A stretch of DNA of 64,000 nucleotides from the IMG/VR virus record IMGVR_UViG_3300046507_000667, positions 185,348 to 249,347 of that record. One strand, 5' to 3'. Below, in pieces: positions 1 through 5,268 of the stretch. How positions within the stretch are numbered: the stretch's first letter is position 1; the number at the start of each line of letters is the position of its first letter. The position numbers were made by a program, and so were the translations under genes. The notes below the pieces were generated by a model, which was given only the letters and a program-made list of their open reading frames with translations, was not told the origin of the DNA and did no database searches.

Positions 1-230
1 CCATCGGAGTCTGCATCGGCAAGGATGATGATTTTGTTGAACTTGAGCTTTTCAAGATTAAAGCTACTACCAGTATCACACTTAAGGATAGTAACAATAT
101 CGTCAATTTCATCATTATTTCGCGCTTTATGCGGTTCAAGTCCGAAGACATTTTTCGGCTTTCCTTTCAGTTTATATACTGCCTGAAAACGCTTATCACG
201 AGCATCCTTTACTGTACCGCCAGCCGAATC
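1..230 (-). CDS. gyrB: Type IIA topoisomerase (gyrase B/ParE-like) exon 2, TOPRIM part; runs off the window
   Basis: Minus strand from 230 reads DSAGGTVKDARDKRFQAVYKLKGKPKNV...KIIILADADSDG, which continues the EG-DSA TOPRIM motif of exon 1 and contains the DxDxDG motif. Confidence 0.93.
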
Positions 231-1280
231 CATATGTTAACCCTAGTATCGTTATTACTAAAGTATGTATGATTTAAATTTCTAAATCAATAATATCCCG
301 CTCATATAATTGCTTAATGATAAAAGCAGATGTCATCATTCCATGTAGAGAAGGAACTCGAATTACTTCAATTCCATGCTCTTTGCAAAGTTTAAACTTA
401 GTTTTGTCTCTATTCATTGTCTTTGGAAATTCAGCTTCTCTTCCTTGCTTGGAAATATAATGCTGTTCACCATCACATTCAATAGCTAAGTTGTACTCTG
501 GTAGGAAGAAATCAATCCTAAGACCAAATTCTAGCTTAAGCCAGTCAAAAGTCTTTTCTTCTTCATATACAATTTCAACTTCATCCAGTACTTCTTTAAC
601 TGCAATTGAAGTCTTTGATTTAGTTTGATTACATGGACACCTAGTACCATTATGAAATAAATCAGGACGAGTTTTCCAATCCTTTCCACAGGTCTTATGT
701 CTAAGTAATACATGAGTTTTGTTATTCACATAGCTACTAATTAAAGTATATTCATTTCCTGTCAAATCTTTTAGCTTTTGACTAAATTCTTCAGCAGTAT
801 AACTCCATGATCTATGTGTAGCACACTTGGGACAATTATTCGGTTTTGGTTTAAGAAAATCATAAGGAGACGTGGTTCCCCACTCATGCCCACACTTATT
901 GTGTTTGAGCATAATAGGATCATGATTCCGAATATACTGTCCTAGAACTGTATACTCTTTACCATATCGATCGCTAACTCGTTTACAAAATTCATCATGT
1001 GTAAGTTGTTTTGGCATTACAATTCTCAGTAGTAGAAACTAAGAATCTGTTACACAATCACCCTCTACCGATACATATCTCATGCTTTCACATGAGTTCA
1101 GATCATATCTTCATACTTAGTTTCAAGTATGTCTCCCGTTTCCCCTGCACTTGCAGAGTACGCCTTATGGCTGATCGTTGAACGTTCCTTTTTCAAGGCT
1201 TCGCTGCTGATTGTCCTCATCTTTACATGTTAGGAGTTTCCAGCAATTAGAGAGATTTAATGAGAGCAACTCGGCAGTTT
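231..1280 (-). mobile_element. Group I self-splicing intron in gyrB
   Basis: 5' exon ends in U (GAGGGU) and the intron ends in G; P1 (GAGGGU/GCUCUC) and P10 (GCCGAGUU/GAUUCGGC) both pair; core elements AAUUGCUGGAAAC, AAUCAGCAG, GUUCAACGAUCA and GAAGAUAUGAUCUG are present; splicing restores LVEG-DSAGG. Confidence 0.93.
274..1017 (-). CDS. Intron-encoded homing endonuclease (Vsr/EDxHD-like nuclease with two Cys-containing N-terminal repeats)
   Basis: Two repeats (HNKCGHEW..CPKC, HKTCGKDW..CP) and C-terminal RIDFFLPEYNLAIECDGEQH; lies entirely inside the intron. Confidence 0.8.
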   Translation of the reverse strand: MPKQLTHDEFCKRVSDRYGKEYTVLGQYIRNHDPIMLKHNKCGHEWGTTSPYDFLKPKPNNCPKCATHRSWSYTAEEFSQKLKDLTGNEYTLISSYVNNKTHVLLRHKTCGKDWKTRPDLFHNGTRCPCNQTKSKTSIAVKEVLDEVEIVYEEEKTFDWLKLEFGLRIDFFLPEYNLAIECDGEQHYISKQGREAEFPKTMNRDKTKFKLCKEHGIEVIRVPSLHGMMTSAFIIKQLYERDIIDLEI

Positions 1281-2618
1281 ACCCTCAACGAGATATAGCT
1301 CTGTACGTACACCGTCTTTTTCTTGACAATCTACGAACTTTGAGATATTGGAAAGTGACGTTACAAATGAACCACTTTCTTTCTTCACATTCTCAAGAGC
1401 ACGTTTCTGTGCTAGACGAGACTTAGCTGAAAGAGCAAACTTAGTCGCAAGGATTTTCATTTCCTTTGGACTATTATTCATCCACTCATCTAGCTTTGCA
1501 TTTGTATACGACAATACATGGCCCGCTACATCAGTATTGACAAGCTTCTGTTTAGTCTGTGATGAATATTTCGGATTGAATACGAATACTGATACTACTG
1601 CTTCAAGACCAACGAATACATCTTCATTGTCAATCTTTTCTTTCGTAAGATTCTTTTCACGAACGAATGCAGTTACTTTCTGACTCAATGACCGTTTGAA
1701 ACCAGTCACATGAGTACCACCTTCAGTAGTCTTAATAGTATTGGTAAATGACGTAATATTGTCACTTGCAAAACTATCATTCCAAGTTAAAGCAATTTCA
1801 ATCTTAGTATCATTAATAACTTCTGAGGCAAGAGATACAGGAGCAATGATACCTTTCTTACCTACTGCTTCGGCTAGGAAGTCAGCTACACCTTCCTTGA
1901 AGTTATGAATAATCGGCTTTTCTTGATGACAGCTATGATATTCAACTGTCAAGCCAGAATTAAGTTGTGCAACTTCACGGAGGAATTTGACAATTTCTTC
2001 TTCAATAGGTAAAGTACCTTCCTCAAAGAATTGAGGATTGAATTGGAAGTTGACACGAGTTGAAGACTTCTTATAACGCTTATCAGCTGGTAAAGTAACA
2101 TTTTTCGATACCTTTACCTTCTGCTCATAACCATTATTGAAGGTAATTTCACCCTTATCAGTTCCTCGTTGTGCTTCTACATAAAAGATTGCTGAAAGAG
2201 CATTAACACATGACGCACCAACACCATTTAGACCAGTAGAATATACTGTCTTCTTTTCAAAGTTACGACCAGCATGGAGCTTGCCAAAAATCTTTGATAG
2301 GGTATTGGAACCATCATCTTGCTTATCAAATGGAACACCTCGGCCATTATCATAGACAGAGAAGCTATAGTCATCATGCCGTGTAACAATGATAGCCGTT
2401 GCAAAACCTGCAAGAAATTCATCAACTGAGTTATTGATGATTTCTCGAATAGCTGTCAAATAACCTGCAGAGTCATTTGGACCAATATACATCTGTGGAC
2501 GTACTTGGACACATTCCGGAAATGGAAGTTCTTTAATGTCCTTACCAGTATAGTCATTTGCTACTTTAGTAGCTGCTGCAGCAATAGCCGTTTTTTCTAC
2601 AGACTTAGTACGAGCCAT
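1281..2618 (-). CDS. gyrB: Type IIA topoisomerase (gyrase B/ParE-like) exon 1, GHKL ATPase and transducer domains
   Basis: VRPQMYIG, EIINNSVDE, DNGRGVP, GLNGVGASCVNALS, EGGTHVTGF, ELYLVEG; the KLPSCSH tail in the ORF track is intron sequence. Confidence 0.95.
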
Positions 2619-3735: not shown

Positions 3736-3769
3736 AATCCCCTATACCTTTTTACGGGTATAGGGGATT
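3736..3769. terminator. CCCTATAC-family hairpin terminator
   Basis: AATCCCCTATACC...GGTATAGGGGATT. Confidence 0.8.
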
Positions 3770-3774
3770 TACTA

Positions 3775-5268
3775 TCAGATTACAAGTCCTCGACCATATG
3801 GACAATTCTGGATATTTCGTTCAAACCTCTCAGGTACCAACCAGAAGATATTCTGATTAGTCTTCTCTGGAAAGTCTGCTTCCATATCAGTCACTGCCAA
3901 TACTGGAAAACGATTACGAATCTTGTCAAGGTGTTCTAGCCATGATACAAAGCTAGTACCACCACCACCCTTAGTAGCTTTTTGGAGCTTTTCTACTGTG
4001 ATAGAATTCGTAATATCGAAGACTTCATAATGAGCAATTGCAGTATCAACTGCATAGTAATGAATACGATATGAATTGAACGATGCGACAATGCTCAATA
4101 CTTCTCGTACCGTCTCATGCAATTCTTCAAATCGACTACCTGAAGTATCGCACATGAATACGATCTCAATCGTATTAGACTTCATACTCTCAATGTAGAT
4201 TCCATGTGGTAAATAACGACGGTTTGGACGACGCGTTGCTTCTCGCTTGAACTCATTGATGATTGCTTGCTGAAGAATTTGAGTATAACGAACTCGGGAA
4301 TTACGTTTATCGTATTCTTTGACAATAAGCTCGGCACCACCGGAAAGTTTCTCTCCAGACATACGAGCATTCATCACTGCTTTACGAATCACATTATCCC
4401 ATTTACGCATTGCCTCTTTGAACTTTTCAGAGCTACCATTAAACATGTGCTCATGATTATCAAAGCTATCATCATCGCCGAAAGAATCTGAATCAGAATC
4501 TTCTTCACCGGGAGGTTTTTCTTTGATAAGTTCAGCGTAAACTTCTTCAGCCGACATTCCCCTGAATTTTTCATCAAGGCAACAGTCTTCTACAAGCTGA
4601 ATCAAATTCGATTTAGCTCGTGCATCATCTTTGAGAGAGATATTGATTGGATGATCAAGTGCAATATTGATCTTCCGAAAGCCTTTCTTGATTTTCCAAG
4701 TAAGCTTTCCAACTTCTTTTTCATCAATATCATCTTTCTTCAAGAGATCTTCTAGTTCTTTCTTTAGTTCTCGGAAAGCTTTAAAGATCGGACTAGTATT
4801 GACTCGTGCCATATGAAGCAGGGCACAATGTAATACTTCATGAAGATAGACAAAGATACGGTTAGGGGTTGAGATATTGGAGAAGAAATGCTCGTTCCAA
4901 ATGATATTTGTAAAGTCGGTAGCTGCTCGCATTCCCAAATATACTTCAACGATTTCTCCTGTATCTTGATTGTAAACTACATTGAAAGACCGAGTCTTTT
5001 CAAACTTAGTCTTCAATGCATCAAGCAAGATAGAATAAAATCGAAAATTGACTGTGATGATCAATTTGATTTTACTAATCAACTTATCCATTTCATCTTT
5101 AGATAAGAGGACAGGATACTTCTTTTCAAAAGCCTTAAATTCCTCTTCGAAATCTTTACGAAAGACTTCAGCATAAGGAATTTCTACAGATGCATAGGTA
5201 GGCTCTTTCTTCTCTTCTTTTACTTCATCTTGTACTTCTTCTTGTTCAACAACGTTGTCAAGATTCAT
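3775..5268 (-). CDS. Putative metallopeptidase plus VWA-like domain protein (DUF2201-like)
   Basis: HEVLH zincin motif, acidic linker, RRPNRR, MIDAS-like DTSGS and GGGGTSF; adjacent to a MoxR-type AAA gene. Confidence 0.85.
   Translation of the reverse strand: MNLDNVVEQEEVQDEVKEEKKEPTYASVEIPYAEVFRKDFEEEFKAFEKKYPVLLSKDEMDKLISKIKLIITVNFRFYSILLDALKTKFEKTRSFNVVYNQDTGEIVEVYLGMRAATDFTNIIWNEHFFSNISTPNRIFVYLHEVLHCALLHMARVNTSPIFKAFRELKKELEDLLKKDDIDEKEVGKLTWKIKKGFRKINIALDHPINISLKDDARAKSNLIQLVEDCCLDEKFRGMSAEEVYAELIKEKPPGEEDSDSDSFGDDDSFDNHEHMFNGSSEKFKEAMRKWDNVIRKAVMNARMSGEKLSGGAELIVKEYDKRNSRVRYTQILQQAIINEFKREATRRPNRRYLPHGIYIESMKSNTIEIVFMCDTSGSRFEELHETVREVLSIVASFNSYRIHYYAVDTAIAHYEVFDITNSITVEKLQKATKGGGGTSFVSWLEHLDKIRNRFPVLAVTDMEADFPEKTNQNIFWLVPERFERNIQNCPYGRGLVI

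What the first reader, a model, noticed from the sequence alone, without database searches (positions are those of the whole stretch)
231..1280. Group I intron inserted in the catalytic TOPRIM motif of a phage gyrase B gene
Seen in sequence: exon 1 stops at LVEG (GGU) and exon 2 resumes DSAGG at 230. P1 (GAGGGU/GCUCUC) carries the U-G splice pair, P10 (GCCGAGUU/GAUUCGGC) pairs across 8 nt, and the intron ends in G. P7 is a compensated variant, GAUCA/UGAUC (1172-76, 1101-05), of the usual GACUA/UAGUC. Established: phage group I introns favour conserved motifs of DNA-metabolism genes. Inference: gyrB is an uncommon host gene, and the ORF track mis-calls it as truncated.
Basis: partly seen in the sequence, partly recalled or inferred. 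Interest (0 to 1): 0.6.

Follow-up and report, generated by a model that had tools for sequence, protein, structure and literature searches.

The report
Group I intron splitting phage gyrB
A jumbo phage's DNA gyrase B-like gene is interrupted, exactly at the catalytic glutamate of its TOPRIM domain, by an ordinary phage-type self-splicing group I intron carrying a homing nuclease. The element is a well-known kind, but the gene and the site it occupies appear to be undescribed.

Summary
Window 231-1280 (minus strand) is a 1050-nt group I intron (Rfam RF00028, 77.8 bits, E 3e-19). It sits between ...LVEG (last codon GGU) and DSAGG... of a GyrB-like type IIA topoisomerase gene in a 249-kb jumbo phage from rhizosphere metagenomes.

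P1 with its U-G pair, the 8-bp P10, the terminal G and the compensated P7 (GAUCA/UGAUC) are all at the stated coordinates. Seven orthologous introns at the same codon, including an unannotated one in Yersinia phage phiR1-37, show compensatory changes in P1, P3, P6, P7, P7.2 and P9. Intron-less alleles and a family profile read straight across the junction.

The 247-aa intron ORF is a Vsr-like (EDxHD, I-Bth0305I-type) homing endonuclease with zinc treble-clef modules. It is not an HNH enzyme, as public records label its relatives.

The site is common in this clade: 21 of 32 nearest GyrB relatives break there, and others break at two or three further conserved motifs. The genome holds about seven more introns.

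Splicing and homing are inferred, because no RNA data exist. Verdict: real, a new member of a known kind, of modest interest.

The parts
1281..2618 (-). gyrB-like exon 1 (446 aa: GHKL ATPase + transducer, ending ...YLVEG; the E is the TOPRIM catalytic glutamate)
   Evidence: Pfam HATPase_c and DNA_gyraseB. phrog_543 positions 6-444. 55.8% identical to phiR1-37 g311.
1..230 (-). gyrB-like exon 2, first 76 codons (DSAGG...ADADSD). It continues beyond the window to genome position 184510, 356 aa in all.
   Evidence: Pfam Toprim from profile position 8. phrog_543 positions 445-576. Translation of L009:663-1730:-.
231..1280 (-). Group I intron, 1050 nt, subgroup IA-like (P7.1 and P7.2 present)
   Evidence: RF00028 at 77.8 bits. 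Orthologues at the same codon in seven other phages.
1281..1287 (-). P1 exon strand UGAGGGU; U1281 is the 5' splice-site U of the U-G pair
   Evidence: Invariant GAGGGU in 8 of 8 orthologues. The pair U1287:A1261 covaries (AU 3, UA 2, UG 2, CG 1). Intron-less alleles use GGA or GGG for this glycine.
1261..1267 (-). Internal guide sequence GCUCUC(A), the 3' strand of P1
1268..1275 (-). P10 intron strand GCCGAGUU; it pairs with exon 2 bases 230-223
   Evidence: 8 bp, chance about 0.006. L024 has GCUGAAUU/GACUCAGC, a C-G to U-A compensation against a synonymous exon site.
1250..1255 (-). P3 5' strand UCUCUC
   Evidence: Pairs with 1137-1132. All 6 pairs show both-sides changes and none is broken among 8 sequences.
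1132..1137 (-). P3 3' strand GGGAGA
1205..1245 (-). P4-P5 domain (P4 1245-1240 / 1210-1205)
1182..1204 (-). P6/P6a hairpin
   Evidence: Hairpin kept with different sequences in all 8 orthologues.
1172..1176 (-). P7 5' strand GAUCA
   Evidence: Three compensated versions among the orthologues: GACUA/UAGUC (6), GAUUA/UAAUC (1), GAUCA/UGAUC (this one). All give 5 Watson-Crick pairs.
1101..1105 (-). P7 3' strand UGAUC
1143..1171 (-). P7.1 (1171-1162) and P7.2 (1158-1143) hairpins between P7 and P3'
   Evidence: P7.2 covaries.
1112..1131 (-). P8 hairpin
1079..1096 (-). P9 hairpin with GAAA loop
1018..1078 (-). P9.1 region upstream of the ORF, with a GGUGAUUGU motif shared with L019 and L015
   Evidence: the 'rest' strings. 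The fold here is not significant on its own.
274..1017 (-). Intron-encoded homing endonuclease, 247 aa: two zinc treble-clef/CapR-like modules plus a C-terminal Vsr-like (EDxHD-type) nuclease domain
   Evidence: Pfam DUF4379 and CapR. phrog_559 at 1e-61. AlphaFold pLDDT 91.9. Foldseek top hit 3r3p, I-Bth0305I. Invariant D169, E180, G183, H186, D204, K207.
240..264 (-). P9.2 hairpin after the ORF, loop AUAACGA
   Evidence: A hairpin with a UAACGA-type loop is conserved in L019, L020, L022 and L023.
231..231 (-). Terminal G (omega G) at the 3' splice site
   Evidence: The intron ends in G in 8 of 8 orthologues.

Best explanation
Window 231-1280 (minus strand) is a mobile, self-splicing group I intron of the common phage IA type. 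It is inserted between the second and third residues of the TOPRIM motif E-G-D-S-A-G-G of the phage's GyrB-like type IIA topoisomerase subunit.

Proposed splicing mechanism. In the pre-mRNA, the last seven exon bases (UGAGGGU) pair with the guide sequence GCUCUCA to form P1. A free guanosine bound in P7 (GAUCA/UGAUC) attacks after U1281. P10 (GCCGAGUU with GAUUCGGC) then holds exon 2, the terminal G231 enters the same pocket, and the exons are ligated. This restores ...LVEG-DSAGG... and an 802-residue protein. That protein works with the GyrA-like subunit encoded just downstream. Without splicing, translation stops seven codons into the intron and no TOPRIM domain is made.

Proposed homing mechanism. 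The ORF between P9.1 and P9.2 encodes a Vsr-like (EDxHD-type) homing endonuclease. It would cut intron-less gyrB alleles of co-infecting relatives near the VEG/DSAGG coding sequence, so that repair copies the intron in.

Shown: the RNA architecture, its covariation, the exon continuity, the fold of the nuclease, and the spread of the element among relatives.

Inferred: catalysis of splicing, nuclease activity and its target.
For: Model and fold:
- RF00028 at 77.8 bits, E 3e-19.
- The single-sequence fold gives all core helices, z = -3.9.

Orthologues and covariation:
- Eight orthologous introns lie at the identical codon, all with GAGGGU|, GCUCUC and a terminal G.
- RNAalifold recovers P1, P3, P4, P5, P6, P7.2 and P9. 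25 of 44 pairs carry compensatory changes, and P3 is 6/6 with none broken.
- P7 has three compensated variants.
- P10 is 8 bp, chance about 0.006.
- The wobble base of the Val codon covaries with the guide sequence.
- All intron-bearing alleles use GGU for Gly, while intron-less ones use GGA or GGG.

Exon continuity:
- The exons abut at phrog_543 positions 444|445.
- They abut to the base in intron-less records.
- An intron-less 781-aa relative exists.

Endonuclease cycle and lineage:
- ORF-less versions of 204-330 nt (L020, L022, L023, L024, L025) sit beside ORF-bearing ones (own, phiR1-37, L019), as expected of a homing cycle.
- The nuclease model's best structural match is I-Bth0305I, then Vsr.
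- The partner GyrA-like gene is present.
- The core is about 75% identical to introns of Staphylococcus and Bacillus myophages.
Against: There is no RNA evidence. No RNA run holds the sequence, so the ligated junction has not been seen.

The four DNA metagenomes laid on the region all keep the intron, and no intron-less allele was seen in that population. Current mobility is therefore unproven.

The nuclease's catalytic motif was mapped only through invariant columns and a fold match of moderate strength (E 4e-4, TM 0.71 on the target).

Exon 2 is preceded in frame by AUG (233-231). Separate translation is therefore not formally excluded in this phage.
Confidence: 0.88

Rival explanations
1. 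Genes in pieces without splicing. The insertion permanently splits gyrB, and the two halves are translated separately and assemble, as in T4 gp39/gp60 with mobA or Aeh1 NrdA with mobE.
For: Exon 2 is preceded in frame by AUG, with a weak purine run upstream. Five of eight orthologues end in AUG and one in UUG. Public records annotate two CDSs. Split phage topoisomerase and RNR genes are known (PMC2988022).
Against: The break separates the catalytic Glu from the rest of the TOPRIM fold. L024 and L025 end in UAG, so exon 2 has no adjacent start there, yet the RNA core is kept. Covariation of exon wobble bases with the guide sequence and of P10 makes sense only if P1 and P10 form. The complete ribozyme core is conserved.
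Confidence: 0.04
2. Decayed intron. The ribozyme no longer splices and gyrB is a pseudogene in this phage.
For: P7 departs from the usual GACUA/UAGUC. There is no RNA evidence.
Against: The P7 change is fully compensated. All core pairs are intact. Both exons are open and conserved. Strain differences in the exons fall on third codon positions where checked (216, 213 and 210). The GyrA partner is intact at 833 aa.
Confidence: 0.05
3. A splicing-competent but immobile intron. The ORF is a relic or has another role, and the intron is now inherited only vertically.
For: All four metagenomes with the phage carry the intron, and no empty site was seen. 21 of 32 relatives are already occupied at this site, so few targets remain.
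Against: The ORF is intact. All invariant catalytic residues are present. The one strain difference seen in the ORF is synonymous, at the invariant D204 codon (read). The ORF is 48-52% identical to those in phiR1-37 and L019 at the same intron position, while other orthologues have lost it. That pattern fits an ongoing gain-and-loss cycle.
Confidence: 0.25

Closest known systems
Phage group I introns of the T4 td/nrdB/sunY, SPO1 and Twort type (subgroup IA2), in DNA-metabolism and structural genes
   Same: Same core: P1-P10 with P7.1 and P7.2, a U-G 5' splice site and a terminal G. The consensus J8/7-P7 reads GAAGAUAU(A/G)(G/A)UC. The core is about 75% identical over 170 nt to introns of Staphylococcus and Bacillus myophages. 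Like them, it is inserted at a highly conserved catalytic motif and carries a homing endonuclease ORF in a peripheral loop.
   Different: The host gene (gyrB-like type IIA topoisomerase) and the site (TOPRIM E-G|D-S) are not among those I could find described. The ORF lies 3' of the core, between P9.1 and P9.2. P7 carries a doubly compensated variant.
The orthologous, unannotated intron in Yersinia phage phiR1-37 (g311 | g312-g313 | g314)
   Same: Same codon, same P1 and guide sequence, and RF00028 at 69.8 bits. The ORF is at the same place and 48.6% identical. The exons are 56% and 40% identical.
   Different: P7 is the usual GACUA/UAGUC. P10 is only about 3 bp. The P7.1-P7.2 region is larger. 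The record lists the pieces as separate genes and calls a 30-codon CDS (g312) inside the ribozyme core.
I-Bth0305I, the EDxHD homing endonuclease family (PDB 3R3P; PMC3239194)
   Same: Encoded in a phage group I intron. The C-terminal Vsr-like nuclease domain is the best structural match. The order is N-terminal DNA-binding region followed by C-terminal nuclease. Acidic and His residues are invariant.
   Different: The N-terminal region is two zinc treble-clef/CapR-like modules (Pfam DUF4379, CapR; DUF723 in relatives), not NUMOD/helix-turn-helix motifs. Sequence similarity is too low for HMMER to find the PDB entry.
T4 gene 39 / gene 60 topoisomerase split with mobA and the 50-nt bypass
   Same: A mobile endonuclease element has invaded the large subunit of a phage type II topoisomerase at a functionally critical region (PMC2988022).
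   Different: In T4 the gene is truly split and rescued by subunit assembly and ribosome hopping. Here a ribozyme should restore one continuous mRNA.

Membership tests
Group I intron (Rfam RF00028) | Covariance-model score above the curated threshold | tested here: met
   77.8 bits against 50, E 2.9e-19, full-length match 1-253.
Group I intron (Rfam RF00028) | P1 formed by the 5' exon end and an internal guide sequence, with a U-G pair at the splice site | tested here: met
   GAGGGU/GCUCUC in 8 of 8 orthologues. The flanking pair covaries with the Val wobble base.
Group I intron (Rfam RF00028) | Conserved core P3-P8 and P4-P6 with the P3/P7 pseudoknot, supported by covariation | tested here: met
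   P3 has 6 of 6 pairs compensated and none broken. P4, P5, P6 and P9 are recovered. P7 has three compensated variants.
Group I intron (Rfam RF00028) | Terminal G and P10 aligning the 3' exon | tested here: met
   G231. P10 is 8 bp (p about 0.006), with one compensated exon/intron change in L024. P10 is weak (3-5 bp) in five orthologues.
Group I intron (Rfam RF00028) | Removal restores an uninterrupted reading frame colinear with intron-less homologues | tested here: met
   phrog_543 positions 444|445. The exons are contiguous in MT835476, MT836192, CAKLQH020000026, L026 and AR9.
Group I intron (Rfam RF00028) | Guanosine-dependent self-splicing | not testable with these tools
   No RNA run holds the sequence.
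Subgroup IA2 (phage type) | Extra P7.1 and P7.2 hairpins between P7 and P3' | tested here: met
   Hairpins at 1171-1162 and 1158-1143; P7.2 covaries. No subgroup-specific model was available, so the subgroup call is by anatomy only.
EDxHD (I-Bth0305I-type) homing endonucleases | Vsr-like nuclease fold in the C-terminal domain | tested here: met
   Foldseek rank 1-2 is 3r3p (E 4e-4, probability 1.00, TM 0.71 on the target); rank 3-4 is Vsr. The model has pLDDT 91.9.
EDxHD (I-Bth0305I-type) homing endonucleases | Composite catalytic motif E, D, x, H, D | tested here: inconclusive
   D169, E180, H186, D204 and K207 are invariant, and D182 is in the majority, among 35 homologues. Residue-by-residue mapping onto I-Bth0305I was not done.
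EDxHD (I-Bth0305I-type) homing endonucleases | N-terminal NUMOD / helix-turn-helix DNA-binding region | tested here: not met
   The N-terminus matches zinc treble-clef DUF4379 and CapR modules instead. Two alpha+beta repeats appear in the model.
EDxHD (I-Bth0305I-type) homing endonucleases | Cleaves the intron-less allele next to the insertion site | not testable with these tools
   -
HNH homing endonucleases (the label given to relatives in RefSeq and PHROGs) | HNH/beta-beta-alpha-metal catalytic motif | tested here: not met
   No HNH family in Pfam even at E 10. The catalytic domain folds like Vsr.
GyrB / type IIA topoisomerase B subunit | GHKL ATPase, transducer, TOPRIM and GyrB C-terminal domains, with an A-subunit partner | tested here: met
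   HATPase_c and DNA_gyraseB in exon 1, and Toprim in exon 2. DNA_gyraseB_C in orthologous exon 2. A GyrA-like 833-aa frame lies downstream. Whether it supercoils (gyrase) or only relaxes or decatenates was not testable.

The most novel reading that the evidence does not exclude
The GyrB gene of the phiR1-37-like and PBS1-like jumbo phages may be a previously undescribed multi-site homing hot spot. At least four distinct group I intron insertion points were seen, each at an invariant motif: VEG|DSAGG, DADS|DG, DxDxDG|K and RFKG|. Some genomes carry up to two at once. The introns belong to one lineage shared with Firmicute myophages. They carry a Vsr-like endonuclease family with zinc treble-clef DNA-binding modules, which the databases mislabel as HNH. 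If so, topoisomerase expression in these phages depends on one or two ribozyme reactions.
Probability: 0.5. Interest if true: 0.45.

Novelty: new member of a known kind. Interest (0 to 1): 0.33.

Why it matters
The finding corrects gene models. The two 'truncated' gyrB pieces here are one gene, and so are those in phiR1-37, Internexus, BpSp and about 28 metagenomic relatives. A called CDS inside the ribozyme (phiR1-37 g312) is probably spurious.

It adds type IIA topoisomerase, at its TOPRIM catalytic motifs, to the list of phage genes colonised by group I introns.

It shows that one intron lineage is shared between jumbo phages of Gram-negative hosts and myophages of Firmicutes.

It identifies a large, mislabelled branch of Vsr-like homing endonucleases with a different DNA-binding module. 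Such enzymes are of practical interest as site-specific nucleases.

It does not reveal a new kind of mechanism.

Tried and rejected
- DNA search against phage records: megablast of the region found nothing.
- IMG/VR scan with exon 1: only two distant, intron-less relatives.
- RNA evidence: no RNA run holds the stretch. Laying four DNA metagenomes showed the intron in all and no intron-less joint. The one joint reported (1211 to 1794, with 494 other letters between) comes from a paralogous intron's conserved core, not from this locus.
- Sequence search of the intron ORF against the PDB: nothing with the single sequence, and only non-significant DUF559/AbaSI matches with a profile. The fold search was needed to place it.
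- Rfam at E <= 0.001 missed L023's site-A intron and the site-B introns of Internexus and BpSp, although their core motifs are plain by eye. The Rfam counts are therefore lower bounds.
- My first regex for P3 mis-anchored in L015 and L025. The alignment-based count supersedes it.
- The phiR1-37 genome paper (J Virol 2012) is not held, so I cannot say whether it mentions the intron. The phiR1-37 RNA-seq paper does not.
I did not use the large representative protein search or the complex predictor, because neither was needed.
- Rejected readings: an intein (the insertion has stops in the host frame and is an RNA-model match), and an HNH endonuclease (no motif, different fold).

Full report
WHAT IS THERE

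The window is bases 185348-249347 of a 249,347-bp virus record with direct terminal repeats and 35% G+C. It occurs in several rhizosphere metagenomes.

On the minus strand, an ORF called as 1257-2618 encodes the GHKL ATPase and transducer domains of GyrB (Pfam HATPase_c, DNA_gyraseB). It reads ...ELYLVEG and then seven unrelated codons to a stop. From 230 downward the frame DSAGGTVKD...ADADSDGKHI... opens and runs 356 codons beyond the window's edge. It matches Toprim from profile position 8.

Against the phage topoisomerase profile phrog_543, the first piece covers positions 6-444 and the second starts at 445. In intron-less records the two pieces match adjacent bases: 22771|22772 in MT835476, 4873|4872 in MT836192, and 37780|37781 in CAKLQH020000026. 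A GyrA-like 833-codon frame lies just downstream.

All protein tests were made exon by exon.

THE INTERVENING 1050 BASES ARE A GROUP I INTRON

Rfam's RF00028 matches 1079-1306 end to end at 77.8 bits (threshold 50, E 2.9e-19). It is the only Rfam family above threshold in the 64-kb window.

- P1 is GAGGGU (1286-1281) with GCUCUC (1267-1262), with U1281-G1267 at the splice site.
- P10 is GCCGAGUU (1275-1268) with GAUUCGGC (230-223). That is eight contiguous pairs directly 5' of the guide sequence, expected by chance about 0.6% of the time.
- The last intron base, 231, is G.
- P7 is GAUCA (1176-1172) with UGAUC (1105-1101).

The 210-nt core alone folds into P1, P3, P4, P5, P6, P7.1, P7.2, P8 and P9 in canonical order at -62.4 kcal/mol, z = -3.9. 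The two hairpins between P7 and P3' mark it as IA-like, the usual phage type. I could not run subgroup-specific models.

COMPARATIVE EVIDENCE

The nearest known phage is Yersinia phage phiR1-37. Its g311, g313 and g314 correspond to exon 1 (55.8% identity), the intron ORF (48.6%) and exon 2 (39.9%). The gap holds an RF00028 match of 69.8 bits. Neither GenBank nor RefSeq annotates an intron there, and g312 is a 30-codon CDS called inside the ribozyme.

A word search with exon 1 found a clade of metagenomic relatives. I fetched contigs for eight of them. Six of the seven site-A contigs hold an intron at exactly the same codon; the seventh, L021, ends just after exon 1. With phiR1-37 and this phage, that gives eight orthologous introns. 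Five of the six score above threshold in Rfam, and the sixth (L023) is recognisable by eye.

All eight orthologues share GAGGGU|, GCUCUC and a terminal G. RNAalifold on their alignment recovers P1, P3, P4, P5, P6, P7.2 and P9. 25 of 44 pairs show compensatory double changes, and P3 has all six pairs compensated with none broken.

P7, which a nested-structure program cannot draw, exists in three fully paired versions: GACUA/UAGUC (six), GAUUA/UAAUC (L022) and GAUCA/UGAUC (this phage).

Two further observations tie the exons to the ribozyme:
- The wobble base of the Val codon before GAG GGU covaries with the base after the guide sequence (AU 3, UA 2, UG 2, CG 1).
- All eight intron-bearing alleles spell Gly as GGU, whereas intron-less alleles use GGA or GGG.

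L024 changes P10 from GCCGAGUU/GAUUCGGC to GCUGAAUU/GACUCAGC, a C-G to U-A swap involving a synonymous Ser codon. P10 is short (3-5 bp) in five orthologues, so the long P10 here is a lineage feature, not a constant.

THE INTRON ORF

Positions 1017-274 encode 247 residues between P9.1 and a conserved 3' hairpin (P9.2, 264-240, loop AUAACGA).
- Pfam sees a zinc treble-clef (DUF4379) and a CapR-like module in the N-terminal half and nothing significant in the C-terminal half.
- PHROGs places it in phrog_559, labelled 'HNH endonuclease'.
- An alignment of 35 homologues has invariant D169, E180, G183, H186, D204 and K207.
- The AlphaFold model (pLDDT 91.9) shows two alpha+beta repeats followed by a compact domain.
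- The best PDB matches of that model are the catalytic domain of I-Bth0305I (3r3p; E 4e-4, TM 0.71 on the target) and then Vsr.

I-Bth0305I is the prototype of the EDxHD homing endonucleases. It is also intron-encoded in a phage, with a C-terminal Vsr-like nuclease but NUMOD motifs in its N-terminus (PMC3239194). This protein is therefore best described as an EDxHD-type nuclease with a different DNA-binding module. It is not an HNH enzyme.

The ORF is present at the same intron position in this phage, phiR1-37 and L019. It is absent from the 204-330-nt orthologues L020, L022, L023, L024 and L025. That is the usual pattern of endonuclease gain and loss.

HOW COMMON

Of the 32 nearest GyrB cluster representatives (at least 40% identity):
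- 21 end within nine residues of (V/C/A)EG (site A);
- six end just after DxDxDG (site B);
- one ends after RFKG (site C);
- three are full length;
- one is a fragment that reads through site A.

L022, L024 and L025 carry a second intron downstream, after CDADCDG, after ADADS and after RFKG respectively. The Bacillus jumbo phages Internexus and BpSp have an unannotated intron at site B, while AR9 has none.

The phage's own genome has four further RF00028 matches above threshold and three weaker ones. They lie in three RNA-polymerase beta-like genes, a portal-like virion gene, terL, DNA polymerase and a DnaB-like helicase. Several carry endonucleases of the same family.

The ribozyme core is about 75% identical over some 170 nt to introns in Staphylococcus and Bacillus myophages.

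WHAT IS NOT SHOWN

No RNA run contains the sequence. Contigs of four DNA metagenomes all keep the intron and ORF, with a few mostly synonymous differences, and show no empty site. Splicing, endonuclease activity and present-day mobility are inferences from conserved anatomy.

The alternative that the two halves are translated separately is unlikely. It would part the catalytic Glu from the rest of the TOPRIM fold. Two orthologues (L024, L025) end in UAG, not in a start codon. The exon-intron covariation would also have no explanation.

COMPARISON AND VERDICT

This is a canonical phage group I intron with a homing endonuclease. It works like the T4, SPO1 and Twort introns, and it passes every membership test that sequence can address.

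Three things are new, as far as the searchable literature shows: the host gene, the site, and the finding that this gene is colonised at several catalytic motifs across a clade of jumbo phages. The phiR1-37 genome paper could not be read.

I rate it a new member of a known kind, of modest interest. It is mainly valuable for correcting gene models and endonuclease labels.

Noticed in passing
Own genome outside the window: G000:C1 105854-106085(+), 12509-12752(-), 44243-44442(+), 65382-65663(+), 72871-73021(-), 37451-37645(+), 174466-173352(-): Seven further group I intron matches, four above the Rfam threshold. They interrupt or abut three multisubunit-RNAP beta-like genes, a portal-like virion protein gene, terL, DNA polymerase and a DnaB-like helicase. 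Several carry endonucleases of the same phrog_559 family, placed 5' of or inside the core rather than 3' of it.
   Followed up: partly
L022:5304-, L024:5321-5576, L025:5981-6303; proteins P0007, P0023, P0024, P0026, P0027, P0028, P0030: Relatives' gyrB carries additional introns at other invariant motifs: after DxDxDG, after ADADS (two codons earlier), and after RFKG in the GyrB C-terminal motif. Some genomes have two introns in the one gene.
   Followed up: partly
L028:2747-3126 (Bacillus phage Internexus) and L029:3262-3531 (phage BpSp): gyrB is annotated as two CDSs. The gap has plain group I core motifs (AAUUGCUGG, AAUCAGCAGC, GUUCAACGACUA, GAAGAUAUAGUC) at the DxDxDG site, yet Rfam reported nothing at E <= 0.001.
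   Followed up: partly
L015:2513-2605 (phiR1-37 g312): A 30-codon 'hypothetical protein' CDS lies wholly inside the ribozyme core of the phiR1-37 intron and is probably not a gene. g313 is labelled HNH in RefSeq, but its homologue here has a Vsr-like fold.
   Followed up: partly
L022:4869-5072: This 204-nt orthologous intron has only three bases (CUC) where P8 should be, and phiR1-37 and L023 have only AAAGGAUU there. In phiR1-37 that strand can pair with AAUCCUUU upstream of P3'. It is unclear whether these are P8-less or rearranged cores.
   Followed up: no
window 240-264 and 231-239 (-), and the same places in L019, L020, L022, L023: The 3' hairpin keeps a UAACGA-type loop, and an AACA(U/C) motif sits 4-6 nt before the terminal G in six of eight orthologues. 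The likely role is a tertiary contact or P9.0, but no partner was identified.
   Followed up: no
window 1027 and 406: Strain differences in other metagenomes: at 1027, G to A on the coding strand changes the purine run (GAGA) 8 nt upstream of the endonuclease start codon. At 406, the change is synonymous in the codon of the invariant D204.
   Followed up: partly
window 3739-3778 (-): A perfect 11-bp G+C-rich hairpin (weak match to NsiR1, E 0.76) lies between two minus-strand genes. It looks like an intrinsic terminator rather than an sRNA.
   Followed up: no
whole genome: Kinship with phiR1-37 and PBS1/AR9 (multisubunit RNAP genes, GyrB clade) raises the question of whether this phage also has deoxyuridine in place of thymidine in its DNA. 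This was not examined.
   Followed up: no
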